This document shows, piece by piece, positions 2,512 through 58,539 of a stretch of DNA of 64,000 nt. Origin of the DNA: Iphione sp. A-MEVVRFRX5 (Eukaryota); assembly GCA_976226885.1 (NCBI GenBank), contig OZ320315.1, forward strand, positions 97,154,001-97,218,000, read 5' to 3'. The position numbers and the translations under genes were made by a program. The notes under the pieces are model-generated. The model did no database searches. It saw only the letters and a program-made list of their open reading frames with translations, and had not been told where the DNA came from. Every line of letters begins with the position of its first letter. The first letter of the stretch is position 1.

Positions 2512-5050
2512 TCATACTCTCCAATTTTCTTTCATCATTCGGTCAAACAGAAATTTCTTCAGTTGATTTTTAATATGGCTTATTGTTTCTTTGTTGGAAG
2601 CAATTGTATATTTCTGTAGGGCACTGGGGATAGTATTCCAGACCTTAATCTTGTTGTAATGAGGGGAATACCTGTAGGCCTCACAGTGCACCTTCAGCAT
2701 TTTTAATTGCAGACTAGTTTTTGCACGTGTATGCACCCCTGGGTGGCCATAGGTTGAGACAGATTCATCTTTAGGGGCTCTGCTACCATTGTTTTCTTTT
2801 ATGGCCATCAGTCCTAGGAAATATTCAATTCTCAAGTCGTATGGTAACAGGTGTAAATTTTGGTATAATATGTCAATGGGGCTTCGCCAATCTAAGAAAC
2901 AGTGCAGGACCAGTCTGTTCAAACAATTTGCAATACTCCTGAACCCAGGACTTCTTTTATTCAGTAGTAACTGGCAGCCCTGATCTGAGTATGGGACTAT
3001 GAAGGACTTAAATATCTGTTCTGTGCCCTTTTGAACAGGATAGTCAGGGGCTTCAAGGAATTCAGCACTCTAGTAATTTGTTTGGTCATTTTCAGGTGCT
3101 CTTCTAGATAGATGCCTAATATTTGACATGGTCCCTTTTATGAAGTCCTATCTTGTTTTCTATCAACTTTCCTTCCTGCTCACTCAATTTATTCCTCGGG
3201 TTAGAGAAGATTATCAGTTATGCTTTCTGATCATTTATATGTAGCCCATTTTTTCTACACCAATGCAATAATACCTGAAAGCCATTTTTTAATTTAGTAC
3301 CAACTTCCTCAGGTGTATTCCCAGTCATCACAAGAGTAGTATTGTCCGCATAGAGCTGACACTCACCCTTGGTAAATTGATTAAGGGGTACTCCTGCTCC
3401 CACTAAGTGTGGTTTAGATATCTTGTTATTCATTTTTGTGTGCTGTTTATGATCTGCAACCAGCAGTGATAGTTGTTTAGGCCAAATAAAGGTAATTTAG
3501 ACAGTATTATATCATGTTGGATGCTGTTGAATGCTTTAGCATAATCTATTAATAGTACCCCAGTTAACTGCTTCTTATTGAAATTTTCATATATAATATC
3601 TGCTAGTCTGACCACGGCGTCAGTAGTTGATCTATTTTTTCTAAAGCCAAATTGGAACTCATGTAGTAAATTGTTTGTCTCAATATGGTTATAGATTCTG
3701 GAATGTACAACCTGCTCAATAATTTCAGAAAATACTGGTAAAATAGTTCTTGGTCTATAGTTTGCTGCATTCTTTCGATCACCCTTTTTAAATAGGGGAG
3801 TTACCAACCCCTCTTTCCAATCAGCTGGTATAGTACCTTTCGTTAGTGAGGCATTTATTAGATGGGTTAGTTGATCTGTTAGGAAGAGCAGCACATTTTT
3901 TAAGAGATAACTTGTACACCGGTATAAGCCCGATGGTTTTGAAGTAACCTTTGAGAATTTCTTTGATCTCCTTCACAGTAGCTACTGTCATGTTAAGTCA
4001 AGGTATTCCTTCATTTTCTTCATCCAGTATGTTACTGAGTATTGGCAGCTCTGGATTTGATGATACATTCTGGGTCCCTACTGTTGCAAAGAATTTGTTT
4101 AAGTATTCAACACTATCCTCCTCATTTAGCAAAAGTCCGTTCTGATCATGTAATATAATACTTGGTTGAGATTTTTCTTTGGTCTTAAAAGCGTTCTTAA
4201 GGATTTTCCAATATCTTTTGGGATCATCCCGATTAGCATCTATTGATTTCTGGTAGTAAACACGTTTACAATTTTTTATTTTAGTTTTAACAGCGTTAAT
4301 TATGCGTTTCGCATATTTTATGTCAATAGGGTCCCTACTTCTCAACGATTTACGATAGACTCTCGATGACGGGATTCCATTTCCTGAATTTACAAGCTTG
4401 TTTATTGTATTTGGGTCCTTCAAATGGGCGTGAGCATGATGATCACTTAAATTCTATTTCCTTCGCACATATTTCAAATCAATAGTTGAGTTCACATACA
4501 GGTGGTCAATAAGTCGCACCCTTGCTACTTTCACGTGTAAATTCTGTTATTATTTGAGTATAGGAGTATTCCTCAAATAACAGTTTCAACCTTTGCGCTG
4601 GTGGATGTTCAAGGTTGGCATAGTTGATATTTACGTCTCCAATGAGAATCGTATTACCCCCCCTACGACCATCTATGGACTCCAATGAGTTCCTAATGTG
4701 GTCAAGAAAAACACCTACACTCCCAGATGGCGGTCTATAGATCATCCTTATGTTTATTTTCGCCCTTAGCAAGATTTGGAGCCAAAATAGCTCAATATCT
4801 TCATTATTGCCCTTTTTGGGTTGGATGAATCACGTATTTGAGTCTTACGATCTTGTCTTAACAGGTAATATCCACCAATTGCCAGACTCGGTGTTAAGAT
4901 ATTTGGAGTCAACCATGACTCAACCAAGATAATTAAGTTATAGCTAAATTTGTTGATTATGATCTTTAATTCATCCAGTTTCCCTTGAAGGCTTCGCACA
5001 TTCATGTAAAATATCTGGAGAGTCCATTTGGCATCGTGTGTCACCGCCAT
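2512..5050 (-). pseudogene. LINE A ORF2 (AP endonuclease + reverse transcriptase), fragmented
   Basis: ORFs 4766-5050, 4506-4772, 3998-4423, 3430-3894, 3218-3433 and 2512-2922 are collinear pieces of an EN-RT protein. Confidence 0.9.
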
Positions 5051-5689: not shown

Positions 5690-6376
5690 TCAAACAATAC
5701 ATTTTGTCAAAAATTTGACTAATTCTCTGGTTCGTTCCCAACGGAATTCTTCTTTTAGATGACATCCATCTGCTGTCTTATAATAACGATGATGGATTTT
5801 ACGGTTGTTGCGACTGTGAATAATACTTCCGACCCATGGAGTTGGCATATCTCGTTTAGCGTTCATTGCAGTAATATCAAGATTGATACGAATTATAGCA
5901 TCGTTTATCATATGCTGACATGGGTGGTCACTACCCATGTCTATATCCTCACTGCCATTGTATGCATTGTATTGGTGTAGGTTTGGTGCAGTAAAGGTAC
6001 TGATTGCAAACTTGTTGCTTTGAAAACGTCGTGACAGCTTCGTTTCTGCCTTGGCCAGCTCCCAATGTACACGGTAGTAAATCTCATCAGCTGATTCGTC
6101 TTGTGGCTGGATATTTCTTGCTGATTTTCCATTTGATAGGGTCACATATTCCAGGTGGGTGATATCATTTGTGCCAGCCAGGATGACTATCAGTGCCGGA
6201 TCCTGATTATACTCAAAATCGACAGCCAAATCGACCACCTCATTCAGCCTTCTTCCCGGATAGTGATGCATGTTTACAAACTGATCTTCTTTCCAGAGAT
6301 TATAACCAATACCCCTGCCGTTCGAGTCTGTGAACAAATAAACATCACTATGCAGATCCCAGATTTCACGAGCCAT
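5690..6376 (-). CDS. SGNH/GDSL-like esterase ORF (228 aa, open)
   Basis: Blocks FTDSNG (Ser), YPG, AGTNDI and ADGCHL (Asp-x-x-His) are all present. Its ATG overlaps the ORF1 stop (ATGGCTCGTGA, 6366-6376). Confidence 0.85.
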   Translation of the reverse strand: MAREIWDLHSDVYLFTDSNGRGIGYNLWKEDQFVNMHHYPGRRLNEVVDLAVDFEYNQDPALIVILAGTNDITHLEYVTLSNGKSARNIQPQDESADEIYYRVHWELAKAETKLSRRFQSNKFAISTFTAPNLHQYNAYNGSEDIDMGSDHPCQHMINDAIIRINLDITAMNAKRDMPTPWVGSIIHSRNNRKIHHRYYKTADGCHLKEEFRWERTRELVKFLTKCIV

Positions 6377-7612
6377 TTTCTAGCATTCGATTTTCGGCAT
6401 GTTTGTCCATGCCTGATCCTTCGTTACGTAGTGTCGTGCGGAGTTCAGTGAGTATATGACCCAGCTGATTCAGTCCTTTGTAGGTACCAGCTGTTATGAG
6501 GGGCGATCTGATTGGGGTGCCTGCCCCCTAAAACCCATCATTGCTTGCCTCAATTAGTAGGCAGTCACCACTCGATAGCAATTTACACTTCAGGTCATTG
6601 TTCTGGGTGAATTGGCAGTGAATATTTCCTTCATACAGGTAATCCTGTCTGCTTCCCAGGCCTCATCGAGTAACAACCTGTGCGTCTTTGCCTTTGTTTT
6701 GAAAGGGTCCTCGGTCATAAGAAGTTCACTTGCAAGAGTTTCGTCGCCCAATCGTTTGGCTTTGGCCACTGCGAATGCTTGTTTGACTGACGTAAATGCC
6801 ATTCTTTCCCAAATGAACTGGCATGAATACAAATTTGAAAAGGGATGGTGTTTCCCGGAGAACGCTAGGCCGGTTGTTGTTCTCACCTCTGAGGCCTTTT
6901 CAAGAGAAAGCTCGTCAGGCAGTTTATGCAAATTGTTTGTAGTAAACACTTGGCCGTTGATTGATAGTTTATCATTTTCCAATTTGGCGGATGCTCTGCT
7001 GGCTCGGGCATGGATAAGTATTTTTCTTAGCTCAGCCCGTTTATTTCTGTCTGATAGAGACAAGTCTTCGTTTATCCAAATCCCGGGGTGCTGTTTCAAT
7101 TTTGGTTTGTTCCCCAGGATTTCATGTTTCCATGACACCTTGAGGAAACTGACCATTATGTCTCTGTTCTTTCCAAATTTCTTTGGGCCCAGGCGAATGC
7201 ATTGGTCAATCTCGTAAGGCTGCATGGTTGGTGATAGCATTTGAAAAAGACCAAGCACCTTGGTCATTGTACTTAGTGGTGACTCAGACTCTTCCTCTAT
7301 TATGCCTGACATTATGATGTTATTCTTGCGTAATATTTTATCATGTTCTTAGGGTAGAATTATCATTGCGTAAAACTGTTACCTCAGCTTGAAGTCGGCT
7401 CACCTCACTTTTCTTGGACTGACCCCTAATTTCATCCACTAGTCTTGAAGTCTCTTCACTATTTTTATTATTAGCATGGGTCCATTCAGCTACCTCAGGT
7501 GTTAACTCATCATTTTTTGCTGTATTAGCTTTTATTGACTGTGTCATAAGAGTGAAGGAAGATGCAATTGTGCTAATATCACGGACAAGCTCTTGTAAGT
7601 TCGTTATATTTT
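6366..7612 (-). pseudogene. LINE A ORF1: coiled coil + RRM/CTD fused to a NADAR domain
   Basis: CIRLG..RDIMVSF..IWINEDLS (L1-like RRM/CTD), then FSGKHHPFSNLY..SVKQAF..AKA..W. After a frameshift near 6600: KFTQN..LL.SG..LIEASNDGF*GAG..GLNQLGHILTELR. Confidence 0.85.
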
Positions 7613-28880: not shown

Positions 28881-31320
28881 TTGCTTGCCTTACTGTCTTT
28901 AACTCCTTTAATGATATTTCTAACAGTGGTTATATCAACTTCGCTCCAGGAAAATGTACATCCTACATCAGGTTCTATTGGGGGCTTGATACTACCATCA
29001 AGATATTTTTGTAAATTTATTCCGATGTTAGCAAAATAGCTGTTCAGACTGTTGGAAGCGACAAGTCCTCTTACTAGTCGATTACCATCTCACACAATAA
29101 TCTCATGTGATTTGGCACCCTTTTTGTTATCTACCAGCGATTTTTTAACGTTAGTCCAGAAACCTCTTGGAGTAATTTAAACGTTTTAAAGAGAGTGTAA
29201 TAGTAGTCTTGTTTGGATTTAACTATATATCGTCTCACTTCATATTTACTAATACGGTATCTCAGCCTAGTATTGGGACTACCACTATTATTATGCATTA
29301 TATAGGCTTTGTTTTTAGAAAGGATTAATTCCCTGAGTCTTTTGTCTTCACCTGCCTTTTTCTTTTTAGGTGTAGTAACCACATACGGGCAGACAACATC
29401 AAACAGTTTGAATAATACCCTTAATAGAAACTCAACCATGTAGTTTACATTACCACTCTCATAGTAAGATGTCCACTTTATGCTTGATAGCTCCTCTCTT
29501 ATTGCTTGCCTTTTTATAGGCATGGTATTCCGAGCTTCCTTCTAAAAACACCCAAAAAGATACTTGATTATGATCACTGATTTCTACTACTTTGCTATCT
29601 AGATCTTGGTAACTCAGGTTTGTAAAACATAAATCAATTCTGGAGTGTTTATTCTTAGATATCCTAGTGGGTTGCCTGACTATTTGCCGTAATCCTGATA
29701 GCCATCATCTCCTCGATATCATCATATCTGGCATCTTTAGTATCGACATTAAAATCACCACAAATAAGCACTCTATTATCTTCAACATATTCCAGTTGTA
29801 TACCTATCAACTCACATGCTGTTTTGAGATTACCACTTGGCGGTCTGTAAATTGTACCTAAGTAAACTTTTTCATCTAACATTAGAACAACCCACATTAT
29901 TTCAATACTTGGTAAAGATTCATTTAAAATACTATATGTCATTAGCTCAGCGTTATAACATTTTTTACGTACATACAGACACCACCTCCTTTCTTCTCTT
30001 CCCGGTCTTTTCTTAACATTTTATAGCCATCGACTGAGAGTGATACTGAAGGTAAAACAGGCTTTAACCAGGTTTCAGTCACCATGAATACATCAAAGTC
30101 ATTGTTTGAGATTATGATTCGTATCTCTTCCATCTTATTAAATAGGCTCCTAACATTTAATTGACCAACATACAAATTTGTCTTGCATTTTACTTTACCG
30201 ATTCTTACCTTACTGAATCAGGTATACATTCCCTAGTACCTTTGAGGGAGATATATATTCCCCAATAATGAGTGAAAATGATCGACAGTGAGTCATGTGT
30301 GAGATTTATGTAATAATACATGATAACAACAAGAAAATGACCCTTCGTGAGGTATCCACACGTCGCCGTAGACCCCCACGGTGAAGACTTGTTCCTTAGA
30401 TATACTTCGTTATGCATTAGGTTTGCATAGATAACTGCGGATTTTTTTAATACACTGAGCACAGAGACCTCCATACTCAGCACATTGTAATCGGTAGTGA
30501 TTCCACAACTAGCCTGTATACTTAGACAACGTTTGTTATCTTATTACACCACAGGAAGTACAATACCAACGGGCATAACAACATCCACACTCGCTATACG
30601 TTGGTACGGTTAGCCGTCGTCAGATATTTTTATCTTCGTTAAAAAACCTCCACCGTACATCAGAGCAGTTATGGGCTTTGAACAGACATACATAGATGGG
30701 TACAGAAACCTCCGCACCCAAGTACAGAAACCTCCATACCTTCCTATCTGATTAAACCAACTAACCAACGAATCCATCGATGTATTTCTTAATAATTACT
30801 GCCATTCTGCCATATGCTTCATCAGTCAAATGGCAACCGTCCTCTAGAGTGTCCTTTCTTAAACGGTATTTACCATGCTTGTTTGGATATGCAACCTTAT
30901 TAATCCATGATGTCGGTACTCCACACGAACAGTTCTTAGCAATTATAAAATTGTTACATTGGACTACCGCATCGTTGATAGTGTCCTGATATTTTCCTGA
31001 TCCCTCAATCTGCTGGCCTAGGTGATGGTTATACAGCACAACATCGAGCGGGTTGAAGGTGGCAAAGATCAACGGACTATTTGGTAATGCCTCAGAGACC
31101 TCCAAGGAAACCAATTTTAAGTTATCTTCGAATTCCCGCACGATTTCTGTAACCGATCCTTTCCTTGGTAGACAGCATCGATATCCTTGTTCATCTTGAT
31201 GCAACTCTGTGATATCACAGATTCCCCCACACAACATGATAAACGCTGGCTGCTCAAAGTCTGTTGTCAAAGGATGTCCACAGATTGTCAAGGCAGTGTG
31301 AGTTGGTCACCATAGTCAGA
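28880..31320 (-). mobile_element. LINE I, 5-prime part: SGNH ORF (30761-31291) + EN/linker of ORF2 (RT deleted)
   Basis: GGICDIT and EDGCHL in the SGNH ORF. GQLNVRSLFNKMEE, TETWL, YRPP, GDFN in EN. Confidence 0.8.
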
Positions 31321-31329: not shown

Positions 31330-32340
31330 GTTTGTACGAAGCCCTTACCAGAAATTTGGTTGGCCAAGTTCCCACCACATTTGGGGCCCCATAATCATAG
31401 TTGAAATTACTGATGATGATCGATGGCAGTGGCAGAATCAGATACTCGGTCGCCCGGTGGTCTGTAGACAGTTAACACTTAACTGAGTGATGAGCAGTTC
31501 ACATTTTGAGTCAGTATCGGCTACGGGGGGTTGACCCAGGAAGCAAATGGTGTCCCTGTTGTAAACAGCAATTCCTCCTCCTCTGTTGCAGCGGTCTTTC
31601 ATCACCATGTTTTATCCTGGGATGTGTATCTCTCCAACTGTGTGGCTTGATCCAAACCACGATTCTGTAATGCAGGCTATGTCAACATCATTGCTTGCAA
31701 GCAGGACAGCTAACTGCCAAGTCTTCTTCAGTAGACTTCTGATATTGTAGCCAATTATGCGGTATCCCATGTTTCCTGGCGTTTGCTAGTAGATAAGCAT
31801 TCTGCACTGGTTCTCATAGACTGTTAAAGAAAGACTGTTAAAGATCCAAAACATAATGCTCAGCTCCCTTTTATTGAATATTCTTACCGAAAACCTTGCC
31901 CCTTGCCAGTATAGTTACCAATGGAATTACAGTGATTCACTAAACGACCAATCGCTAGTCCTAGCAAGTTGGCTCCCCTTTCTATATCATCTTCGCCACA
32001 CTCTTAGATTGGAGTCAAGAGCTAGGTATGGTTGTGATTGTATTTACTCTCAATAAATGTGTCCAGAATAACCTCTAAGGCATCTGTCCATTGCTTAGTT
32101 GCATTGATTCTGTTTCCAATTTTTCGCGCTTTGTAATCGGAACAACAGTAGTAATTGCCATCTAATTCTAGTGGCGAATGCTCCATTGGTGATAGCCCGA
32201 TAGAGTCTTGCATTAGATCATCACGGTCCTTAGGTGTATAGCGCTCCCCTTCCAGAAGCAGTTCACGCACACTCGAGCGCTTCCCCTGTTTTCTTGCAGA
32301 TGCTGCTATGCATGATTGACTCTGATGTGCATCCATGTTT
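31330..32340 (-). mobile_element. LINE J remnant: ORF1 CTD + deleted NADAR (about 31930-32132) + EN fragment (31330-31780)
   Basis: ARKQGKRSSVRELLLEGERYT (CTD), KIGNRINATKQW-x13-SKYNHN, GANLLGLAIGRL (NADAR). Manual translation gives GYNIRSLLKK..ITESW..RGGGIAVY and YRPP. Confidence 0.7.
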
Positions 32341-35300
32341 TTATGCATGTTACATCTCATGACATCCCGATACCAGCTACCCTTTTTGTACTTTGATAGA
32401 GTGGGTCTATACAAGGACAAGGTGGGACCCATACTTTTCCTGGTTGGTCTCCTCGGTCTCTTCAGATGACACAGCTTTTGATTCACCATCTTGTGGAACA
32501 ACAGCATGCCTTGTATGTTACCTCTTTTCTCCAGACTCCTCAGGTTTAATTCACGTCTGAGACGTTTTGCAGACTTGATAGTTATTCTAGTGCACAGTAC
32601 AAATCTCTTTAGTAAGTAGTTGTACTCAATCTGCAGGTTTGTTAACAACTTATCATTTGCAGATACTATATGACAATTGAGAACAACAATGGGCTCAAAT
32701 GGCTCCCCTGTGGGACTCCTTGCTGGACAGACCGTTTGGATGCTTTAAATTTAGAAACCATTCCGAAATGAGTCTGCCTATTGAATTGATTCATAGCACT
32801 CATTCATAAGGAATGTCATGGCAGTGGACATCCTCCTATCAGGTCTGAACACGTGCTGTTCTGGAGCGAGCTGGGACAATTTCTCTAAGTATTCAGACAA
32901 CTTCTGCTCTACATGACTTTCTACCAGCTTCCCCATTCCATGAAGGATGGATACTGGTCGATAGTTCTCTTTCAGTACAGCAGGCTTCTTTTTGAGAATG
33001 GGCCTGACTCATGATGTTTTCCAGGCACTTAGGAAATTGGTGCTAGTGATTGAGATATTTACTATTGACAGCACTAACATCAGATTGATCATAGTGGTGT
33101 CTTTGAAAACCCACATTGGCACATCCTTATTCCACTCGATTTCTTGTCATTTAGCCAATGTACTGCCATTTGTAACTCTCTCTCATTGTCGGTGTGCACC
33201 ACCCTGTCAGATTAGCCTCAATATTTTCTATTTTGATCGATGAGCTTGCCACCCTTGTAAGGCCTGTTGCCTTTGCAATAAACCACTCATTGGGTAACTC
33301 TGGTACACTTTCCAGTGAGACCTGGGCATCATCTGTGTCCTCTTCAAGACATCGGTGTTGATTATATTCCAGTAATCCCTGGCATTGCTACAACTGTCCA
33401 GTCATCATTCTCTTGTAGAATTTGCCTATCCTGTTTGGGTCTGTCTGCATGTTTACGGTATTCATTTAGAAAGTAATTTCTATTCTTAATAGCCTCAACG
33501 ATTCTTGGTGTTACCCATTCATGCTGTTTCCTACACTTGTATTTTCGGATTAACACAGATCATTTGCCCCTCCCTCATTGCATCTTTTAGCCAGGTCCAT
33601 ACTTCATCAATGTTTCCAGTTGTCGGGTTTGGGAGGTTCTTTACTATGGGGTGCAGAAATTCAGCTCCGACTTACTATACTTAACTGTATGATCTAGCCT
33701 CATATTCCATTGTGATGTACTTTTCCCTTTCCTTCTTATTTATTAGGTAGACTGGATAGTGGTCACTAGTGGCTTTATCAAATACACCTGATGCTGTACG
33801 ACATATTAGTAAACATCAGATCAAGACATGATTTTGACGTTTTGTGTAGTAGTGTTGGTTCTGTAAGGTACTGATGTATACCTCACAGTTTCATGCTTTG
33901 CTCAAATGCAACCTTGTGTGCCGTGTCCGTTAACCAATTTATATTAAAATCCCCACATATGATTACATCTGTTCCTTTTTGAAGAGAATGTAAACAAGTA
34001 GTGAAATAGTAATTTCTCATCTCGAAGTTTACTGGGGGAATGCAATAGCAGCAGCAAAGCAAGCTGACTCCAAGTGTTCGTTCATTATGTCCATGTCATT
34101 CAACTCAGTTAAATGGCAGTCTTCTCTAATAAATATGCATGTCCCACCACCTTTGCTTTTCAATACTGATTTTAACTTGATCCTCCCAGATAGTCTGTTA
34201 ACCATGTTTCTACCAGTTAAATTGCAATCAGTGTATATTGTTTTGCCAGCATTTCAACTTCATGTAGTTTCGGAAGTAGACTCCTGATGTTCCAAGTGAT
34301 GAATTCACGCCCCTTGCTGTCCGCCATTCCTCTGTTGTCACGACGGGCAGCTGATAGGTTGATAATTAGTCCTGGAGCAGTCCTGTAATGTAGTCTCCTA
34401 CATTACATGACCAGTTGTAGATGATGTGATGACTCACTCTGCCAGCTGTAACTCATGAGAACTCATGTACTGGCCACGAGGTCTCAGGAGTAGAATGGCC
34501 TGCAAGTAAGTTCCGTTTCTTCAACGGCCAGATTGTAATGGCATATCTGGGCATTCAAGACGGATTGCTCCTCTGGCTTGCTGTCAGACAGAGGTATACT
34601 GTGTATCGGGAGGAACAGAACAGGGTGCATCATATTATTAACAAGATGGTGCGAGATGGTGGCTCGGTATGTTGTGTGTCCACATCATCATCACTACTCA
34701 CACGTAGCACCCACCATCCTCCTTCCCGTTCTAGAAACGTGTGGAGCCCCAGCCTTATCACAGGTCAAACTGAATAGACTGATTGGAAGTGAAGAGGTGT
34801 GGTGAGCAATCTCTTATATGGTCGTCGCCGGGTACACATGCGTCGATAGGAAAAACCTGTCATAGAATTTCTCCTGGACGTAGTAGACCAGTTCAATGCC
34901 GGTTTCATCTGTTATGTACCGCACAGTCCGATTCATACCTGGAAACACCCCAGGAAACAAGCTTCATTACTTAGTCAGACAAGCAGTTTGTGCTTTATGG
35001 ATGCAGTAGTCCCGTTATATGAATAAAGTTAGACACTATTTTTGAGTGATAAATCCTATCTGAGGACCAGCGTTAGGCACACAACTCAAAGAGAGGGGGA
35101 CTCATCCACCTGGTTTAGTAAGATGTATAGGCTAAAATGTCCTCTCCCATCTCATCAGTCATAAATTGGATTACAGGATTCCTCCATGGAATGGAGATAT
35201 AAATAACTGTCTTTCATCGATCCCACACCACCGCATTGTTGTACTTTACTAATTAGAAGAAATCATGGATGCGTGTCCATTGAGGTATTCATCACAGAGT

Positions 35301-36910
35301 CAAGCCTACCATATACTTGTCCCCGTGTCTGTCCCCCCACACACATGAGTCCCACAGATTTAAACTTGAGCCTAGTTAGGACGCCTCAACAAGGTACAGG
35401 GTGTCACTTTTACAAAGAAAGTCAAAAATGGCTGGATTCTGCTCCAGCTTACTTCGTGTCAGGTCTACCAGGAGTTGAGCACTTTGTGATTCCCACTCTG
35501 TGTTTGTTGGTAGGCGACTCCCAATGGTTCTTATGACTATCGGGTTTCTCTCGTCTTTGATGCTCTGCGCTGTTTATGTATCGCCCAGTGCTACCACTTC
35601 ACAGTGCTGCTAGGTCTGCTCAACCTATGTGTACTTTGTAAAGCAGGTTACACTCGTACTGATTGACAATGGGAATGTGAATGTCAATGTGTTCTCGTGG
35701 TGATACAAGTTTGCTTCTTCTAATGTCTGCCAGCATGTCAGGGCTGGCAGTAACTCCGATAGCTTGTCATAGCTGTAGCGTATGCCATTAACCATGAGGA
35801 TTATCCCCTTCACACCTGCCCGATGGCCTAGCTCCCTTGCATGATGGGCAATTGTTTGAAGATCCCAATGTTTTCCTTGTAAATGAAGTGGTGTAAATTC
35901 GTTTGTATTCTTTGTGTGTTTTTTAGCTGAAATCTGGCTCTGTAAGCAACATCTCTGGCCCTCGGTTGGTTTTGCCTGTGTTTTCCAATTCTTCTTACCT
36001 CCTCGATTTCATTTTCATCCATTGCACTGCCAATACTTGCCAGGATGTCTGTAACTACCTGATAAATGTCTTCGTCTTTCTTCCTCTATCCCTTGGAATA
36101 TGAGGTTATTCTGACGTTCTGTTAGGTCTTCACTACTGTCTGCGACGGAAGCTTCGGTTTTGTCTCTCAAGCTAGATGATGATTCTTCCTTAAGAGTGCT
36201 TACATCGTTTTCAATCTTGTTAGTTTTTATTTGAATATATTCCGTTGAGGATGCAATCTCTTGTAGTTTTTCCTCTTGTTTCATTAGCCCTTCTTCCTCG
36301 AGCCTCCTAAGCCTTTCTCAATGTTTTACTGTGAAACCCGACTTCCTGTGCTCTAGAACAGTTACAGGGCTTTGTTTTGCTAAGCTTCTGAAAGGTTTCA
36401 TGCGAGTCTGCTACTACTGGTTACCTCTTCATCCTGTCTTCCCGCGCAGGTGGGAGCCCCTCTTGGCCGGCGTCCTTCCTTGTCCTGGCCGGGGTTTTCG
36501 GGCGGTAATGGGTTACTCCACTCACAATCCCTGTCCTCGGTTGCAGTGGTTGGTATCCCGCTACCGGTACTCCCTGTTGCAACTTTGCCGTTTAGATCTT
36601 GTTCGGTTTATCATGTCTTCCTGTCTACTTGGACATCCACTTGGATTTGTAAATTTGGTTATAGTGGCGATTCTGTTTATCAGTATTGTAGCGCTCGGTA
36701 CAGACACCCACTACCGTTTCTATCTATACTACTGAGTCACCACAGGCAGCTACAGACACAGGTATCATGGACAGACCAACCGAAACAGAACTGAGGGAGC
36801 ATTCTACTACCTCTGCACTGCTCTGCCTAGTCTTCTTAGCAGATCTGCCCCCAGAGGAGGATCTCTTGCCTCTCTTTTGCTGCCTAGGCTGCTCAGCTGG
36901 CATGCCCATG
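32340..36910 (-). mobile_element. LINE M (related to LINE D), heavily decayed: ORF1-NADAR, SGNH-like ORF, EN-RT
   Basis: ORF1 35625-36910. NADAR about 35290-35690 (VEQT*QH..W..SKLEQNP..YLVEAS). TDEMG at about 35140. EN TWNIRSLLPKLHEVE at about 34200-34320. RT YRPVSIL and GVPQGSHLSP at 32700-32970. Confidence 0.8.
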
Positions 36911-45300: not shown

Positions 45301-48080
45301 GTTATGTGTATTCAAAAAATAAACAAAGTCATCCCAGTTTCGCAATAGGCTGCGCACATTAAGGTATGTTATTAACAACATTTGTTACAACAACATCTTG
45401 ATCCACTGCCTAGTATGAATAAGATTGAAATAATGACTGAAAGAAAAATTGCTGAAAAGCAAAAAAGTGACATCAAATTTTGATATTAAGAAATTTGGAC
45501 GATTAATATAACAATCTATCATGGGATCAGTTGCGCCAAATCTTGAACTGCATGGGCTCTATCTACAAAGTTTCATAAAGCCGACTGAGATACCGACACA
45601 TAATGCGTGACATGACATAGCTGTAATGTCTAGTTAGATGCACACCATCTCAAAGCCTATTATACTTATGCCTGTAGTGTTGATTCTCCCTCTTATGTAC
45701 AATAGCAAAGATCGGCACCGTGTACAGGCCTTGGCTACTATTTTCGCATCTAATGAGCCAATTTAGGTACAACACACAAGCATTTATTATCCGCTGAAAA
45801 ATCAACTGACTGCTTTTCCATACTTGAAAACCAAATCTATGTTTTAGTCATGGTAAAACATGCTAAACATTGATGAGATAACTAGAGTGGTGCCCACTGC
45901 TGCTAGTTCAGCACGAGCATCACGCACCTCATTTTCAAACAAATCTTTTAATGCGGTCTTACCCTCCTGCGCAGTCAGTGATCTAGTACATACCATACCA
46001 GTGGGCAGTCCTGGGTCCACTCGAGCAAATTTGTACAGTTTTGTTATATCAGATATACCAGCAAGTACCACTAGGAATCTAATCCTGTACCTATACTGAT
46101 AACAAAAATTCACTCCTACCTTAATAGCGGATCCCAGTCAAGCCCCTGGCATCACAATTACCCTAGCGCCATAGTACGACATATTTGAAAAGTCCTCCAC
46201 AAAGTCCCTTCCATGACTGTTCGTCATGATCCTAAATATGGTAACATGATCGTATTCCATCATATATAACGAGGCCTCTTAGATACAGGAAAACCCAAAG
46301 GATAGAAAACAGATAAGGAAACAATAGATAACATAGGATTTAAACATTGTCAATCACAAATGCAAAAATATACAATAAACAGACATAAATGCGAAATATT
46401 CATCACAACACAGAGGAAAAACATTCTTATTTGCCCCTGATGTCATTGCGCACTAGTGTCAGTAGACGCCCATAATGGTTGTGCCCCTTATAGGCATATC
46501 GTTCCTTTTTAGACGAGGTTGGTGGCACTCCAGACCCCCAGTAATTGTCACCAGACAAAATCACTATTCCGATGTCACCTGTTGCTAGAAGATCGTCCCG
46601 GGATCTTTTGTCTTGCTGGAATTTCTCCCTCAATATTGCACGAAGGACCGACAGCTTAGCAGAATCCCATGCCTTGGTTACAGGAATCTTCTTGCTCAAC
46701 TTACTTATCTTCATAGAGCTTGCTGCCTTTTTAATGTTTGCCCCCAGCCTTTCCTGCTTCGATTGCATAGCAGCCTCGTAGTGGAAAACGTGAGCGGCAG
46801 ACCTAAAATAAGATCCGTGCCACATTAGGTGTTCATCTTAACCATATGCAAGTCTTGACCCCTTCAGTTCAATAAAACACAATTTCTCGACACCAGCTGG
46901 TGAACCAACAGAGGATGCAGGTGAATTTACCTTACTATCCTCTGCAGCGACCTCAGTCTTGTAATTCGGTGTCGATATTGTAGGGTTGACGACAGAAGAC
47001 AAATTATTACTTACTTCTGAACTCAATGCAGAGTGTTCATCCGGCACAGGCACCAGTGTCACGGAAGGTGAGGTGGCAGTGTCTGTGCTCACTGTTACAC
47101 TGGCATCGGAGCTCGGTGCGCACTGGTGCGTGTCGGAGGGCAGGGTCGGGGAGCCCGAACAGCCTGCCACACTGACATTCTGGTCCGAATCTCCGGCACC
47201 CACCCCCCCGTCCACGACGGCTTGCACCATGCCAATGGACACATCCATTGCCTGCTCCCCCTCAGACATGGGGTCTCTCGATTTAGTCGCCTCACTAGCT
47301 GCCCCCTTGATGCGGTCTTGACGGTCCTGGGAGGGCGGTCTGCACTGCATTTTCTTGAGACGATCTGCCTGGCCTGTTCCCGTTGGAGCGGGGTGTAATC
47401 GTTGTTTATCCAAACATCCTGTCCATGTAATCGCCTTTTGGCACCCATGACTGCCTCTTTAGTGCTGGTTGAAGTAAACCGTACAAAAATACCTCTCACC
47501 CCACCAGCATTTTGCCGGTTGGTCCTATAGGTCCTAATCACATTCACATTTATAGACTTGCACATATCAAGTACAGTCCTAACTACGTTTTCTCCCAGCC
47601 TCTCTGTGAGACCTATGTAAATATTATTTTTCCGTAGCAGTCTGTCCATCATCTCGCATTTCTTCTGAAGAGCTGATAGGTTACCACTACTCGTTATACC
47701 CACAACCTGCCCTTGCAAGGCAGAGTTATGTGTCTCTAAATCATCCATACGCTTATTCATGGCTGTGACATCATTACAGAGGTCAGCAATGTCTGTGGTA
47801 TTTTGCCTTACCAAATCAGAAAGTTCACTGATGTTATTATCACATATCAGAATCGAGTCCATCTTACCGTGAAGTTCCTTGTCTCTTTCTTTAAGTGATT
47901 CATCTCGTAGCTGTATCTCATCCAAGATTCTATCCAACCTTCTCAATATATCCCTGTCAGGCTTTGGAATCGTCCCGGCACTACCCTTTGACAGATCTTC
48001 TTCCAACACTTGTATTTTCAAATCACGGTCCAAAGGACTGATCTTTCCTTTTCTCACCAGGGAGACTGTTATTTGAACCG
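42318..48080 (-). mobile_element. LINE L, near full length: ORF1, Ser/Thr linker, NADAR, SGNH ORF, EN-RT
   Basis: AATAAA/poly(A) at about 42318-42337. RT 42963-43952, EN 44762-45200, SGNH about 45844-46260 (TNSHG, AGISDI), NADAR 46427-46880, ORF1 46838-48057. Confidence 0.9.
46427..46880 (-). pseudogene. Divergent NADAR domain of LINE L ORF1
   Basis: FRSAAH..W..LRAILREKFQQD..LLATGD..SGDNYWGSG..GHNHYGRLLTLVR. One in-frame stop upstream of the 132-aa ORF. Confidence 0.8.
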
Positions 48081-48099
48081 ACGGGTGTAGAACCTAGGT

Positions 48100-49918: not shown

Positions 49919-52691
49919 CTAACTAGCTGGTGTTTGATGCTGCCTATACACAATTCTCTTGAATTCCTGCACAGAGAGATTGGGTTTACTTGGATAGGGA
50001 ACTCTGTTCCATGCAATAGTGCCTTTGTACCAGAAAGACTTTTGATACAGGCCTTTCCTTGGGTTTTTCAATTGGATGTTATCCACGTTACTGTATCTGA
50101 GACGTCTGGGCTTTACAAGCATCTTACTTTCAGCAATACAATGGAGTCTGTGAATTAACATGATCAATTGCTTGTTCCCTCTATCACTCACTGTTTCAAG
50201 ACCAGCTTTTGTACGTAGGGAGGTCGCTGAGATCCTGGTTTTTGTGCTCCCTAACAGTACTAGTTTGCTTGCTCGATTGATTTCAGATTGAAGATCATCC
50301 ACGATGCCCTTACTAGCATTGATCATGAAAGGGACACCGTAGTCCAAAGTTGGCAACACAAAAGTATGGAATAGTCTAAGCCTGTCTTTAAAGGGGAGAA
50401 ACTTGACCAACTTAGAAAGACCTATTGCCCTTTGTCTGATTGCTGTTTTTGTTTTTCTCACCATAGGCCTCCAGGATAGCTTATCATCTATAACATAGCC
50501 CAGTAACTTGCAATATGATACTCTTGTTATCGGCTGGCTATCAACACTTAAATCCAACACATACTGATTTGTCCTTCCAAAAGTGAGATACTGAGTTTTT
50601 TCTATATTTAGAGTCAACCCGTTTTCATTAGACCAGTTCAGCACATCTTTGATGGACCTCTGTAGCTTCAGCCGCAGGGTTAAGGCATTTAAGCCTACAC
50701 ATGTTACTGTTAGATCATCTGCATACAGGACTGCGCTTGGGGAGGGAATTTATGACAATGGAGAACATCAGGGGGCCCATAAGGCTCCCCTGAGGCACTC
50801 CTTGGTTTACATTGAGTAGGGAGGAGACAGCCTGATTACACTTTACATATTGCATTCTACCACATAGGTATGTTGACGACCACTTCAGAGCCTTGGGACC
50901 CATGCCTGCTGAATGAAGACAGTTTATAATCAGATTGTGGTTGATTACATCGAACGCTTTGGAGTAGTCAAAGAGAATGCTCGCTACATATTTGTCGTCA
51001 TCAACTGCTGAATATATATCTCGCAGGTATACACCAAGGGCTGTGCTGGTTCCCCTCTGACGACGGAAACCGTGTTGCTCGCGACAGTAGTAGTTACTCT
51101 CTTCCAAGAAGGAGACCATCTGATCATGGATTAGGGCCTCCACTAATTTCCCTACCAATGGGAGTATTGCAATCGGCCTATAATTCTCTTTTTTGACTTT
51201 AGACCCTTTTTTGTGCAGAGGTGTTATTCTTGCTACTTTCCATGCGCTTGGGAAGGTACCAGTAACAATTATCTCGTTAACAATGCTAAGAAGTAACTCT
51301 GAGGACACCAGGAGAGCATCCTTGAGAACTATAGTAGGGATCCCATCAAGACCACTTGGCTTTTTCGGTTTAATTTGCAGTACCTTCTTTACTAATGCAT
51401 GATGTGTCACCGGTTCGAGATCCCATTTATGCTCGCTAGATGGAGGTGTTGGACTGATATACTGACATAGCTTTTCAGCTTGAGTAACAAACATGTTGTT
51501 GAAAACATCAGGGATTTCGGATTCAGATAGATTCATATCATTTTCAGTTAAATTGATTTTGGTAGAACCTTTTCCTTTGTTTAACACTGATGAATTAATA
51601 CAAGACCAGTACTCTTTCGCACTCGTGCAACTTCTGAGTATCTTTCTATAGTAATCACGTTTGGCTTGTGTTGTAAGCTTTTTCACTTTAGATTTAAAGA
51701 ATTTCGAGATTCTTAAATCATCGACGTTACCGGAAAATTTGTATTCACGCAGGAAGTGGTCACGATTGCGAATTGCATCTAACAGTTCAGGGGTTACCCA
51801 GTCCGAACCTGTCTTTTTTGACTTTGGGACCTGTGGACACAATACGGTAACAGCTTTCTCAATACCATCTTGTAATGCATTCCACTTATCAGTGGATGAG
51901 TACTTGTCGTCATTCAGATAGTTATCTAATATTGGCTGTAAACAATCCTGCAGGGCATATTTGTCATAATTTCGCCAATCCCTACCTAGAAAGCATTGTT
52001 TCTTTTTTCTTTCCCTGATTTTCTTATTTACTATGAATACAGGTTTGTGGTCGCTTACATTTATATCCAATGTCCCATGATCTGAGATATTTGACATATT
52101 CGTGAAGATTAAGTCGATAATCGACTTGCTTGAGTCATGTATTATTGTCGGCTCATCAATTAATTGACTCAAACCAAACTTTGAACAGATCTGATCTAAT
52201 TTACATACTGTGGGAGTTTTCTTCGCCCAGTCAATATTTAGATCTCCCCCAATAATAACATCACCTGCACCCTTTCGCTTCATAGCAGTTGTAGTAACTT
52301 CAAGATACTTGATTAGATCAGTTTTACTACTAGATGGCGATGAGTATACAACACTGACACCTAGTGGTTTACGGTACTTTGATTGTAATAATAGCCAAGT
52401 CGATTCAAGGTTTTCAGAACTACAGGATAGCTCTGGGTATTCAATAACAGTCACGGTTTTTTGAACGTACACTAGTATCCCACCAACGCGCTTTTTTATT
52501 GATGACACTCTGTCCTGACGAAAAAGATAATAGTCTGAGTGGTTCAAAATATCGTCAGTAGCTGCTGATGAGAGCCAGGTTTCGGTGATGCAGCACATAT
52601 ATGGTTGATAATTGTCTAGCAGCAGCTTCACCTCATCAATTTTAGGTAGAATACTCCTAATATTCCAGAAGATTATTCCACGGCCTTTCAT
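49919..52691 (-). pseudogene. LINE D ORF2 (EN + RT, frameshift near 50700)
   Basis: FWNIRSILPK, TETWL, GDLN, SDH, NYRP, QHGFR, FDYSKAFD, GVPQGS, YADD. Confidence 0.92.
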
Positions 52692-53491
52692 TTTTATGGA
52701 TTAATAACGATACAGCTAATGTAATTAAGCCCGTTGTGGTAGGGTTAATTGAATTAATTCAGATACTGAGACAACCTAGTGGAAATTGAAAGGAATGAGA
52801 TGAAAGATTAGGTTTAGAGAAGCCTAACGAGGTAGTCTCCAACATTGCAGGCCCAATTGTACACAATATGGTGTTTAACCCTGCCTGCAACATTCATCCG
52901 TCGATGAAATCATTTACAGGCCATGCTGTTTCTGGTGTTATGGGCCCCCCAAGTAGGTTCACCTCTGCTACTGCCAGGTTGTAATGGCAGATCTGCGCAT
53001 TTAACAGAGATTGTTCATCGTTATTGTCACTGATCAGGGGCACCCCATTCACAGGGAGGAAAACAACAGAGTGGCCTAATGCATTGAGGTGATTGGTGAT
53101 TATGGATAGGTTTGTAGGCACATTAGCCTCCACGTCCTCATCATCACTGTGTTTAAGCGTTCATCGACCATCCTCCTCTTTGGCATACGAGTGAAGCCCC
53201 ACTCGCACTACATTCAGGCTGAAAGGACCATCAGGAATTGATGCTATGTGTGATGCGAGGTCCTCTGTCGATAGTCCAGGGTAGATATGAGATGATAATA
53301 TGAACTTGTCTTGGTACGTCTCCTGTATGTGATATGCAAGTTCAGCACCTGTTTCATCCGTCAATAAGCGCACCAAGTGGTTCATCCCTGCAATCGACCC
53401 AGATGTGCTTGTCAGAATATATTCCCTATTGTCACTAGTAAATTAGTTCCTATTTTCACCAATTTACTTGAACAGTTTACAAGTATCTATG

Positions 53492-54967
53492 TTAGATTTT
53501 GTTCGGATTCCAGTTTTCATTGATACACACTTCCCTTAGAGACATTAGCGCTTTGCCCACTTTGTTTGCCCCTTGTTGCTCGTTGCCTCTATCACAGCTA
53601 TCCCACAGATTAACCCCTGAACCGAGGTCAGCGTCGTATGTGGATTCAACCAAGTAGAGGTTTTCACTCCTTCTGAGATAGTCAAGTAAGCTAGGGTTTT
53701 GCTGGAACTTACTGTATGTGATTTCCCGAACCAGGTCCGTACTACTCTTTTCCCAGTCCTCGGTCATTGTGACAAAGTTGCCAAAATGCCTTATCTTCGA
53801 GGGAATATTTTCATTGAGAATTTCTCAAGCTATGGTAGACTCTCCTGCGGCGAGTGCCTTCTGATGTTGGTAGGCCTGCTCGGCCGAATTATATTCTGTA
53901 CCCTTGAAAACGACTCTACATTTGTACAGATTTGAAACAGTCACATGTTCTCCCCTGAACGCCAGCGTCTGGTCATTGTGGTAACTGTTTGCTTCCTCAA
54001 GTGTCAGAGCTGTTGGTAAGGCCAATAGTTTGTCGTGACAATAGGTTATGCCGTCTACCTGAATGCTAATCCCTTTTACGGTTGCCCTATGTCCCAGCTC
54101 ATGGGCGTGTCGAGGAATGTCTTCACTGACATACACATTCTTGTATTTTCGAGAATGTTTTAGTCAAAATCTCCCTTTGTAGACTTGATTCCTGGACCAA
54201 ACAGCCTTGAACACAATCAAGATTGGTCTCGATTTCTCTCTGTTGTACTTTCCTAGACGCCTGACATCAGCTATTTTGTCTTCATCCACAGCGTCATCTA
54301 TGTAGCCGCAGATTTCACTCACTCTTTCAATCAGATTCTCATTAGGCCTTTCCGATAGTCCTTGTATAATTAGGTTGTTTTCTCTTTCCTTTAGTTCTTC
54401 ATTTTGAGTGTCATCCTCTCCGTTTACAGTTGATCTCTCAGCATACTCACAGTCCTGCGTAATTTTCTCAACAGATCCCTCGATCCTGTCAAGCCTCTCA
54501 TTAAATTTGGCCGAGAGTGTTTCCACTCTCTCATCAAAGCTCTTTTCCACTTGATCCAGCCTGGTAGATATTGCTTCAAGCCGATCAGTCAGTGTGCGTT
54601 GAAAGCTATCATACAATGCTTTCAATTGATGTAGGGTTTCCAGAATTCCTTCCTTCTTCAGGTCAGTGAGCGAATTCAGCAATAGAGCTTGCTGACCTTC
54701 AATTTCTTGCAATCGGCAGTTAATATCCACTATACCTTGTTCAACGATTTTCATGCTTGCTGTCGGGGTAATTCCTTCCGAGCGGTCATCGTTCTGCTTG
54801 GACCGGGGGCCCTCCACGTCGTTTCTGTGACCATTGGGCGATATAGGAGGCGAACGCTTGGTATTTGAAAGTCCATGGCTCGTAACGGTCGTACCTTCAA
54901 CATTTGAATCATTGTTGTCTGGCTTTTTCTTTCCTTGAGTCTTTTTTGATCTTGTTAGATTCGTCAT
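53492..54967 (-). pseudogene. LINE D ORF1 (coiled coil-RRM-CTD) fused to NADAR
   Basis: FRGEHVTVSNLY..SAEQAYQHQKA..W..SKFQQNPSL..LVESTYD..GANKVGKALMSLR. Confidence 0.88.
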
Positions 54968-56516: not shown

Positions 56517-56520
56517 GGTG

Positions 56521-58535: not shown

Positions 58536-58539
58536 TCAA

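What the first reader, a model, noticed from the sequence alone, without database searches (positions are those of the whole stretch)
6366..7612. LINE ORF1 proteins fused to a NADAR (ADP-ribose glycohydrolase) domain, in six diverged copies
Seen in sequence: directly after the L1-like RRM/CTD of ORF1 there is a NADAR signature (F..SN.Y, S.EQ..KA, W, KF.QN, LVEAS.D..WG.G, G.N..G..L..LR). It occurs at about 6400-6865, 31930-32132, 35290-35690, 46427-46880, 53492-53960 and, as a short remnant, 61775-61835. The copies differ too much in protein sequence to be recent duplicates, so this looks like a lineage-wide module rather than one capture. Established: NADAR is the YbiA/T4 gp30.3 superfamily, and characterised members remove guanine-linked ADP-ribose from DNA (the DarT1-NADAR toxin-antitoxin system). 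Guanine-specific DNA ADP-ribosyltransferases exist in animals (pierisins, clam CARP-1), and viral macrodomains counter host ADP-ribosylation. Known CR1/L2 ORF1 modules are RRM, PHD and esterase; I know of no NADAR description there but cannot exclude one. Inference: these LINEs carry an ADP-ribose eraser in their RNP to protect RNA, cDNA or TPRT intermediates, implying a host nucleic-acid ADP-ribosylation defence against retrotransposons.
Basis: partly seen in the sequence, partly recalled or inferred. Interest (0 to 1): 0.92.

Follow-up and report, generated by a model that had tools for sequence, protein, structure and literature searches.

The report
LINE ORF1 proteins carrying a NADAR domain
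Several old, broken LINE retrotransposons in this window encode an L1-type RNA-binding ORF1 protein that ends in a NADAR domain (an enzyme fold that removes ADP-ribose from DNA and RNA bases). The same fusion is intact, widespread and conserved in public assemblies, has been mentioned once in the literature, and its function has not been tested.

Summary
On the minus strand, four diverged LINE copies carry a NADAR domain directly after a coiled-coil/RRM/CTD ORF1 (6868-6369, 35573-35266, 46837-46430, 53962-53495). A fifth copy is a weak remnant (32140-31887). A sixth (61807-61778) is only a motif.

Intact relatives are common. HMMER finds 2119 clusters at 50% identity, and 148 of the best 150 carry NADAR. 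They sit in front of APE-RT ORF2s in young, poly(A)-tailed, multi-copy elements.

An AlphaFold model of an intact relative (pLDDT 90.8) matches both solved NADAR/YbiA structures and the human L1 ORF1p trimer. The catalytic Glu/Lys/Glu are nearly invariant, NADAR is the best conserved part of ORF1, and dN/dS is about 0.1.

The fusion is not new. A 2025 paper notes NADAR in the ORF1 of oyster "Tx1" LINEs.

Possibly new: in a sub-lineage (window copies A and E10, public loci L005 and L009) a separate SGNH/GDSL-like esterase ORF overlaps the end of the NADAR ORF1. One window copy has lost all three catalytic residues.

The anti-ADP-ribosylation counter-defence idea is plausible, consistent with published NADAR biochemistry, and untested.

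The parts
7344..7547 (-). Copy A (element E1): coiled-coil piece of ORF1, in a different frame from the RRM part
   Evidence: Heptad-like ORF with weak bZIP/coiled-coil Pfam hits. The position matches the long helix 39-131 of the intact homologue model.
6869..7312 (-). Copy A: L1-type RRM plus CTD of ORF1
   Evidence: HMMER hits span this part and NADAR in a single stretch in the best 150 public proteins. The homologue model matches the human L1 ORF1p trimer 2ykp/2yko, TMt 0.72.
6369..6868 (-). Copy A: NADAR domain. Broken by a frameshift near 6613 and an in-frame TAG at 6530-6528. The first catalytic Glu position is Lys. The frame stops at 6368-6366.
   Evidence: Pfam PF08719 E=7.3e-6, 7e-4 and 0.05 on the three pieces at consecutive profile positions. 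Family HMM. Sequence read.
5690..6376 (-). Copy A: intact 228-aa SGNH/GDSL-like esterase ORF. Its ATG (6376-6374) lies 11 nt before the end of the NADAR frame, in another frame.
   Evidence: SGNH blocks FTDSNG, GTND and DGCH. Pfam Lipase_GDSL E=0.013. Homologous ORFs in the same position in L005 (BLASTP E=3e-9) and L009 (HMM 1.4e-25; Pfam GDSL E=1.3e-4).
3191..5050 (-). Copy A: decayed ORF2 (APE 5050-4509, RT 3942-3191)
   Evidence: tblastn with APE-RT ORFs.
53495..54967 (-). Element E12 ORF1: coiled coil 54967-54167, RRM/CTD plus NADAR N-half 54163-53828, NADAR C-half 53824-53495. One frame with two in-frame stops. Catalytic E, K, E kept; the Trp of the WG motif is Leu.
   Evidence: Pfam NADAR 56.9 bits. 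Family HMM 9e-23 and 2e-17. Residue check.
52897..53442 (-). E12: region between NADAR and ORF2, a possible esterase relic with TDE in place of TDS
   Evidence: Conserved with 34963-34487. hhalign to esterase blocks I-II gives E=0.002 but only 14% probability. Weak.
49958..52691 (-). E12 ORF2 (APE-RT; 658-aa open stretch 52691-50715)
   Evidence: Pfam Exo_endo_phos, Exo_endo_phos_2 and RVT_1. tblastn.
46430..46837 (-). Element E10 NADAR: open 136-codon stretch and the best Pfam score in the window, but all three catalytic positions are replaced
   Evidence: 73.6 bits, E=2.9e-20. 0 of 3 catalytic positions kept against 17 of 29 other conserved positions, Fisher p=0.09.
47098..48093 (-). E10 ORF1 N-part (coiled coil plus RRM), followed by a Ser/Thr/Pro-rich linker (47458-46841)
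   Evidence: BLASTP to the RRM region of public ORF1-NADAR proteins, 1e-9. Sequence.
45653..46278 (-). E10 esterase-like module in three pieces, about 150 nt after NADAR
   Evidence: tblastn with the copy A esterase and alignment. These pieces were used to build the esterase HMM, so their scores are not independent evidence.
35266..36299 (-). Element E8 ORF1: coiled coil/RRM 36299-35628 and a decayed NADAR 35573-35266. Sister of E12.
   Evidence: Pfam NADAR E=6.4e-5. Family HMM 1e-13. tblastn 40-44% identity to E12.
31887..32140 (-). Element E7: 5'-truncated NADAR remnant joined to the end of E8 ORF2 and followed by APE 31767-31519
   Evidence: Family HMM E=9e-7, profile 58-93. No Pfam hit.
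61748..61858 (-). Possible NADAR remnant (LVEASLDSKW at 61807-61778)
   Evidence: Motif only: 2 matches in the window against 0.055 expected in shuffles, with a pattern chosen after seeing the data. No significant profile score.
30764..31306 (-). Esterase-like ORF of another 5'-truncated element (E6), upstream of APE 30217-29570
   Evidence: tblastn 7.5e-14. Pfam GDSL E=0.07. Alignment.
55875..56630 (-). Esterase-like module of a further element (E13), in three pieces
   Evidence: tblastn 4e-16. Blocks FTDSHG, GTND and DGCH.

Best explanation
These are decayed copies of at least three deep lineages of a poly(A)-tailed, APE-type LINE family.

The ORF1 protein is an L1-type packaging protein with a coiled coil, an RRM and a CTD. 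By analogy with the human L1 ORF1p trimer that the model matches, the coiled coil probably drives multimerisation. The C-terminus of ORF1 is a Glu-type (YbiA/NADAR-family) NADAR domain.

Shown here: the domain identity, the fusion, its wide occurrence, its position in the element, its fold, and strong purifying selection on its catalytic residues.

Inferred:
- The domain is an active N-glycosidase.
- It rides on the retrotransposon RNP because it is tethered to the RNA-binding ORF1p.
- It removes base-linked ADP-ribose (guanine- or cytosine-linked, as shown for characterised NADARs on ssDNA and ssRNA) from the element's RNA, its cDNA or the nicked target DNA.
- This would reverse a host or toxin-type ADP-ribosylation that would otherwise block reverse transcription or integration.

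In a sub-lineage a second accessory hydrolase is added. It is an SGNH/GDSL-like esterase, encoded as a separate ORF that starts 11-20 nt before the ORF1 stop in another frame. That layout suggests coupled translation.
For: Domain identity: Pfam NADAR above the gathering score in two window copies, with collinear sub-threshold pieces in two more.

Breadth and architecture: 2119 public cluster representatives at E<=1e-3 and 546 at E<=1e-10. The best 150 match RRM/CTD and NADAR in one stretch. 148 of 150 carry NADAR, usually at the very C-terminus.

LINE context:
- L001-L003 are about 4.9 kb and 99.8% identical, with a 438-aa ORF1, a 964-aa APE-RT ORF2, an AATAAA signal and a poly(A) tail.
- The same ORF1-then-ORF2 order is seen in L005-L011.

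Fold: AF2 pLDDT 90.8. Foldseek gives 8bau NADAR with ADP-ribose E=3.9e-10, YbiA 2b3w 6.6e-9, and human L1 ORF1p trimer about 1e-7.

Selection:
- First Glu kept in 145 of 146 sequences, Lys/Arg in 131 of 148, last-strand Glu in 120 of about 124.
- E315, K374 and E395 are invariant in 53 full-length proteins that share 26% mean identity.
- NADAR is the most conserved ORF1 region: 33% mean pairwise identity, against 28.5% for the RRM and 15% for the coiled coil.
- dN/dS is 0.11 between two intact subfamilies.

Biochemical precedent: NADARs, including an animal (sponge) one, remove G- and C-linked ADP-ribose from ssDNA and ssRNA (PMC11543638, PMC11125620, PMC12945103). NADAR and Macro domains in invertebrate +RNA virus polyproteins are read as counters to host ADP-ribosylation (PMC9503650).

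Esterase ORF.
Against: - No enzymatic activity, substrate or host ADP-ribosyltransferase was tested, so the target is pure inference.
- YbiA itself acts on riboflavin intermediates, so NADAR chemistry is not restricted to ADP-ribosylated nucleic acids.
- One window lineage (46k) has replaced all three catalytic residues while keeping the fold motifs. Catalysis may therefore be dispensable in some lineages.
- All window copies are broken.
- The source organisms of the window and of most public hits are unknown.
- The esterase assignment rests on motifs and sub-threshold GDSL hits. Its AF2 model was poor (pLDDT 59) and its fold search was not significant.
Confidence: 0.5

Rival explanations
1. 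The NADAR domain acts on small molecules or RNA ends rather than on base-modified nucleic acid. Candidates are ADP-ribose-derived immune signals, ADP-ribose phosphate by-products of RNA repair, and NAD/ADP-ribose-type 5' caps on the LINE RNA.
For: The Aravind group proposes soluble ADPr derivatives or RNA-processing by-products as preferred substrates of many viral NADARs (PMC9503650). [quoted passage not shown] The conserved catalytic residues fit any N-glycosidase role.
Against: Every NADAR family assayed so far removes base-linked ADP-ribose from ssDNA/ssRNA. Covalent tethering to an RNA-binding, multimerising ORF1p fits a macromolecular substrate on the RNP better than a diffusible one.
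Confidence: 0.2
2. The domain is kept mainly as a non-catalytic nucleic-acid- or ADP-ribose-binding module of the RNP, that is, a pseudoenzyme or reader.
For: Window copy 46k keeps 17 of 29 conserved fold positions and an open 136-codon frame but has lost all three catalytic residues.
Against: The catalytic Glu, Lys/Arg and Glu are nearly invariant across 148 highly diverged representatives. The 46k pattern is a single decayed copy and is not significant (Fisher p=0.09).
Confidence: 0.1
3. The juxtaposition is an artefact: host NADAR gene fragments, chance motifs, or unrelated insertions lying next to LINE ORF1 remnants.
For: All window copies are broken, and the window is a dense pile of nested and truncated elements.
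Against: Intact single ORFs encode RRM/CTD plus NADAR in many public assemblies, upstream of ORF2, in near-identical multi-copy elements. The same order recurs in four diverged window copies.
Confidence: 0.02

Closest known systems
[quoted passage not shown]
   Same: A NADAR domain inside a LINE ORF1 protein of a marine invertebrate. Some public relatives found here (L010, L011/L012) have an L1/Tx1-like ORF2 with a C-terminal zf-RVT zinc motif.
   Different: That report is one sentence based on a BLAST hit. It has no architecture, conservation, structure or esterase ORF. I could not test whether the window elements belong to the Tx1 clade. Their ORF2 relatives of about 960 aa lack the zinc motif.
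Mammalian L1 ORF1p (Type II ORF1: coiled coil-RRM-CTD; PDB 2ykp/2yko)
   Same: The intact homologue model superposes on the human trimer chain with TMt 0.72 and E about 1e-7. It has a long N-terminal helix, an RRM and a CTD in the same order.
   Different: Sequence-level membership is not seen. Pfam Transposase_22 is not hit by the window ORF or by P0002, and is only 'faint' in P0010. L1 ORF1p has no enzymatic domain.
Esterase-containing ORF1p of CR1/L2/RTEX/Penelope elements (ZfL2-1; PMC3905857)
   Same: An SGNH-type esterase with Ser (block I), GxND-like block III and DxxH block V, encoded upstream of ORF2.
   Different: Published esterase ORF1ps 'lack structural RNA binding domains' and were called unique among ORF1ps in having an enzyme. 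Here the esterase is a separate overlapping ORF after an RRM/CTD-NADAR ORF1. Homology to ZfL2-1 was not demonstrated: there was no PDB sequence hit to it.
Characterised NADAR/YbiA glycohydrolases (P. nicotianae NADAR 8bau, E. coli YbiA 2b3w, sponge NADAR, DarT1-associated NADAR)
   Same: The same fold (TMt 0.74-0.75) and the Glu...Lys and last-strand Glu catalytic residues of the Glu-type NADAR/YbiA families.
   Different: Not a toxin-antitoxin partner: there is no adjacent DarT/ART gene, and the last-strand residue is Glu, not the Asp of DarT1-linked NADARs. Here the domain is fused to a retrotransposon packaging protein. Activity is untested.
NADAR or Macro domains in polyproteins of invertebrate +RNA viruses, and NADAR at the N-terminus of Gypsy Pol in Ectocarpus
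   Same: A selfish RNA-based replicator carries an ADP-ribose-processing domain. Foldseek against viral models finds nido-like and other RNA-virus polyprotein NADARs at 22-28% identity (PMC9503650; PMC12477816).
   Different: Different host protein (ORF1p rather than replicase or Pol). No close viral donor was found, because all viral matches are 31% identical or less.

Membership tests
NADAR superfamily (Pfam PF08719) | Profile match above the curated gathering score (35.1 bits) | tested here: met
   46837-46430 scores 73.6 bits and 53824-53495 scores 56.9 bits. Intact homologues score 81-137 bits. Copies A and 35k give only collinear sub-threshold pieces because of breaks.
NADAR superfamily (Pfam PF08719) | YbiA fold (five core helices flanked by small sheets) | tested here: met
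   Tested on the intact homologue P0002, not on a window copy. AF2 pLDDT 90.8; Foldseek 8bau TMt 0.74 and 2b3w TMt 0.75.
NADAR superfamily (Pfam PF08719) | Catalytic Glu (SxEQ), Lys/Arg seven residues on, and Glu in the last strand (Glu-type NADAR/YbiA families) | tested here: met
   Nearly invariant in the family. Within the window: 53k keeps 3 of 3, copy A 2 of 3, 35k 1 of 1 readable, 46k 0 of 3.
NADAR superfamily (Pfam PF08719) | N-glycosidase / ADP-ribose glycohydrolase activity | not testable with these tools
   Needs a biochemical assay.
DarT1-NADAR toxin-antitoxin system | Adjacent DarT1 ADP-ribosyltransferase gene and Asp in the last strand | tested here: not met
   The neighbours are an esterase ORF and an APE-RT ORF2. 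The last-strand residue is Glu.
L1-type (Type II) ORF1p | Coiled coil, then a single RRM, then a CTD, as in 2ykp | tested here: met
   Structural match of the intact homologue to human L1 ORF1p trimer chains, E 1.8e-7 to 1.6e-5.
L1-type (Type II) ORF1p | Sequence match to Pfam Transposase_22 (PF02994) | tested here: not met
   Not reported for the window ORF or for P0002. Only a 'faint' precomputed hit in P0010.
SGNH/GDSL esterase (as in LINE Type IV ORF1) | Blocks I (Ser), II (Gly), III (GxND) and V (DxxH) in order, and a family profile match | tested here: inconclusive
   The blocks are present in copy A, L005 and L009. Pfam Lipase_GDSL hits are all below the 23.6-bit cut-off: 22.7 bits/E=1.3e-4 (L009), E=0.0035 (L005), 0.013 (copy A), 0.07 (E6). 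A profile search against PDB finds mostly GDSL-like proteins at E 0.015-0.4, with one unrelated BolA-like chain among the six hits. AF2 pLDDT is 59 and the fold search is not significant.
Tx1 clade of LINEs | Placement by RT-domain phylogeny with reference elements; C-terminal zinc motif in ORF2 | not tested
   No reference RT set was available. The zinc motif is present in L010 and L011 but absent in L001 and L006. The window ORF2 ends are decayed.

The most novel reading that the evidence does not exclude
A large, old family of invertebrate LINEs equips its RNP with one or two accessory hydrolases. NADAR is always present, and a sub-lineage adds a translationally coupled SGNH esterase. [quoted passage not shown]
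Probability: 0.25. Interest if true: 0.85.

Novelty: new variant of a known kind. Interest (0 to 1): 0.58.

Why it matters
ORF1 proteins of LINEs are usually seen as RNA chaperones and packaging proteins. The SGNH esterase was described as their only enzyme.

A second enzyme in ORF1p changes that picture. It is strongly conserved, its relatives erase ADP-ribose from DNA and RNA bases, and it occurs in thousands of diverged ORF1 clusters. That points to a host-retrotransposon conflict over nucleic-acid ADP-ribosylation in animals.

The idea is directly testable, because natural intact copies exist and assays for NADAR activity are established.

It also suggests that some of the 'animal NADARs' counted in surveys may in fact be retrotransposon genes.

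Tried and rejected
- Word-indexed protein search with the esterase ORF found nothing. The same search with the isolated NADAR domain found only 4 short hits. No outgroup tree for the origin of the domain could therefore be built.
- AF2 on the esterase with a 4-sequence alignment gave pLDDT 59, and its Foldseek search was not significant.
- phmmer of the esterase against PDB found nothing relevant.
- None of the best 150 ORF1-NADAR proteins contains the esterase. The C-terminal extensions of the longer ones have no Pfam domain and are low-complexity where read.
- The viral fold library showed no close donor; all matches are 31% identical or less.
- Source organisms could not be named.
- dN/dS for the NADAR part alone failed because synonymous sites are saturated.
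- Other large window ORFs gave no Pfam hits.
- The artefact and host-gene readings were rejected (see rivals).
- No contig looked human. No N runs are present.
Full report
**What is in the window**

The flagged interval 6366-7612 lies on the minus strand. It is the ORF1 region of a decayed LINE, here called copy A or element E1.

Reading from high to low coordinates, copy A contains:
- a coiled-coil piece at 7547-7344;
- a 240-aa open stretch at 7312-6593 with an L1-like RRM/CTD followed by the first half of a NADAR domain (Pfam PF08719, E=7.3e-6, profile positions 9-97);
- a frameshift near 6613;
- the second half of NADAR in another frame, 6641-6369 (profile 97-124 and 144-163), with an in-frame TAG at 6530-6528 and the frame stop at 6368-6366.

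The window has no N.

**The other copies**

All copies are on the minus strand.
- 46837-46430 scores 73.6 bits (E=2.9e-20).
- 53824-53495 scores 56.9 bits (E=3.9e-15). Its N-half, 54163-53828, lies in the same frame across one stop.
- 35573-35379 gives E=6.4e-5.
- An HMM built from public homologues raises these scores. It also detects 32140-32025 (E=9e-7, profile 58-93), a 5'-truncated remnant.
- The 61.8 kb site is only the string LVEASLDSKW. That is one of two matches in the six-frame window to a motif pattern chosen after the fact, with 0.055 expected in shuffles. I treat it as suggestive.

Each NADAR follows a coiled-coil/RRM part and precedes an APE-RT ORF2.

On a tree of the domain, copies A, 46k and 53k/35k are as far apart as random members of the whole family. 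Their distances are 3.0-3.6 substitutions per site against a median of 2.8. Only 53k and 35k are sisters.

**Intact relatives in public data**

An exhaustive HMMER search with the 240-aa piece found 2119 representatives of 50%-identity clusters at E<=1e-3 and 546 at E<=1e-10. The best 150 align in one stretch across RRM/CTD and NADAR.
- 148 of the 150 contain NADAR and 117 contain it full-length. It normally ends the protein, with a median of 6 residues after it.
- Pfam scores for intact members are 81-137 bits.

Genomic context confirms that these are LINE ORF1s.
- L001-L003 are three loci of about 4.9 kb that are 99.8% identical. Each has a 438-aa ORF1, a 366-nt spacer, a 964-aa APE-RT ORF2, an AATAAA signal and a poly(A) tail.
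- The same ORF1-then-ORF2 order is seen in L005-L011, from four ENA or NCBI assemblies.
- Window elements also end in poly(A), for example T15 on the plus strand at 21071-21085.

**Structure**

AlphaFold2 on the intact homologue P0002, with 53 homologues, gave mean pLDDT 90.8 and pTM 0.77. The model has a long helix (39-131), an RRM, a CTD and a C-terminal alpha/beta domain.

Foldseek against the PDB returned, in this order:
- Phytophthora NADAR with ADP-ribose (8bau, E=3.9e-10, TMt 0.74);
- E. coli YbiA (2b3w, E=6.6e-9, TMt 0.75);
- the human LINE-1 ORF1p trimer (2ykp/2yko, E about 1e-7, TMt 0.72).

At sequence level Pfam Transposase_22 is not matched.

**Selection**

Mutagenesis of characterised NADARs defines a Glu, a Lys seven residues later, and an acidic residue in the last strand. 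That last residue is Glu in the NADAR and YbiA families and Asp in the DarT1-linked ones (PMC11543638, PMC11125620).

In the LINE family:
- the first Glu is present in 145 of 146 sequences, Lys/Arg in 131 of 148, and the last-strand Glu in 120 of about 124;
- in 53 full-length proteins with 26% mean identity, E315, K374 and E395 of P0002 are invariant;
- NADAR is the most conserved part of ORF1, with 33% mean pairwise identity against 31% for the CTD, 28.5% for the RRM and 15% for the coiled coil;
- two intact subfamilies in one assembly (L001 and L006) give dN/dS 0.11 over ORF1, with synonymous sites saturated.

The domain is under purifying selection on its active site.

Within the window, 53k keeps all three catalytic residues, copy A has Lys at the first Glu position, and 46k has replaced all three.

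**A second hydrolase**

Directly after NADAR in copy A lies an intact 228-aa ORF (6376-5690). Its ATG is 11 nt upstream of the end of the NADAR frame, in another frame. It carries SGNH blocks I (FTDSNG), III (GTND) and V (DGCH).

Diverged relatives in the window lie:
- after the 46k NADAR (46278-45653);
- alone in front of APE fragments at 31306-30764 and 56630-55875.

Two public loci from different assemblies have the same three-ORF layout with an overlapping start:
- L005: ORF1 6887-8173, esterase ORF 8157-8801, then APE and RT. BLASTP to copy A gives E=3e-9.
- L009: HMM 1.4e-25; Pfam Lipase_GDSL 22.7 bits against a cut-off of 23.6.

Other members (L001, L006, L008, L010) have no esterase.

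Evidence for the SGNH assignment is convergent but sub-threshold. The structure route failed.

Published esterase-type ORF1ps are said to lack RNA-binding domains and to be the only enzymatic ORF1ps (PMC3905857). This combination is therefore a variant I did not find described.

In elements E12 and E8, the stretch between NADAR and ORF2 may be an esterase relic with Glu in place of the nucleophile Ser. The hhalign support is weak (E=0.002, 14% probability).

**Clade**

The clade is unresolved.
- ORF1-NADAR sits in front of very different ORF2s. L011/L012 and L010 end in a CxxC...H...C zf-RVT motif, as in L1/Tx1. L001, L005, L008 and the window copies are about 960 aa without it.
- L011 shares only 21-26% identity with the others over short stretches.
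- This fits ORF1 shuffling as described for the Jockey superfamily (PMC4120745), or great age.
- An RT phylogeny with reference clades could not be run.

**Prior knowledge**

Only one paper in the searched library links NADAR to LINE ORF1. PMC12477816 (2025) reports NADAR at the N-terminus of Gypsy Pol in Ectocarpus. It adds that Repbase ORF1 proteins of several oyster Tx1 families also appear to be YbiA-family NADARs, possibly processing RNA intermediates.

The survey of viral NAD/ADP-ribose systems lists NADAR in nido-, hepe- and picorna-like viruses of invertebrates but mentions no retroelements.

NADARs of all tested families, including a sponge enzyme, remove guanine-linked ADP-ribose. 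The NADAR and YbiA families also remove cytosine-linked ADP-ribose, from both ssDNA and ssRNA.

**Interpretation**

Shown: identity, architecture, breadth, fold and constraint.

Inferred: the domain is an active glycohydrolase, carried on the RNP by ORF1p, that clears base-linked ADP-ribose from the element's RNA, cDNA or target DNA.

It has no direct support here. Rivals are small-molecule or RNA-end substrates, or a non-catalytic role. Artefact is excluded.

**Handling notes**

No contig looked human. Broken copies were read in pieces or with X at the breaks.

Noticed in passing
window 3191-63810, minus strand: Every LINE-derived block in the window (at least 13 APE, RT or ORF1 pieces from many diverged elements) is on the minus strand. 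Several are joined head-to-tail with 5' truncation, for example E8 ORF2, then a truncated NADAR at 32140, then APE at 31767, then the esterase at 31306, then APE at 30217. This could be serial insertion into A-rich tails or a one-strand TE trap such as a piRNA-type cluster.
   Followed up: no
window 46430-46837 (-): This is the best-scoring NADAR in the window and is open for 136 codons, but all three catalytic positions are replaced while 17 of 29 other conserved positions are kept (Fisher p=0.09). It may be a pseudoenzyme lineage or just decay.
   Followed up: partly
window 52897-53442 (-) and 34487-34963 (-): In the sister elements E12 and E8, the stretch between NADAR and ORF2 is conserved between the two. 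It aligns weakly to esterase blocks I-II, with TDETG in place of TDSxG, so it may be an inactivated esterase relic.
   Followed up: partly
window 6366-6376 (-); L005 8157-8173; L009 about 7438-7457: The esterase ORF starts 11-20 nt before the ORF1 stop, in another frame, in three diverged elements. This layout suggests termination-reinitiation or another form of coupled translation.
   Followed up: partly
L004 1109-1834: In one public copy the DPYWGAGV.LT segment of the NADAR C-terminus is expanded into a long tandem array.
   Followed up: no
L008 6001-7995 and 8806-10800: Two identical 664-aa ORF1-NADAR genes lie in tandem in front of a single APE-RT ORF2.
   Followed up: no
window 58426-59508 (-): A 360-aa ORF with a weak tyrosine-recombinase match (Phage_integrase, E=1.4e-5, below the cut-off) lies in a GC-rich stretch at 56-60 kb. 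It is possibly a DIRS- or Crypton-like element.
   Followed up: no
L011 (GCA_029976255.1) and L012 (GCA_013332695.1): Here ORF1-NADAR carries a faint Transposase_22 signal and precedes an L1/Tx1-like ORF2 with a zf-RVT zinc motif. A conserved 90-aa ORF of unknown nature lies between ORF1 and ORF2.
   Followed up: no
window 13347-14414 (+): This 355-aa ORF is the longest on the plus strand and has no Pfam match.
   Followed up: no
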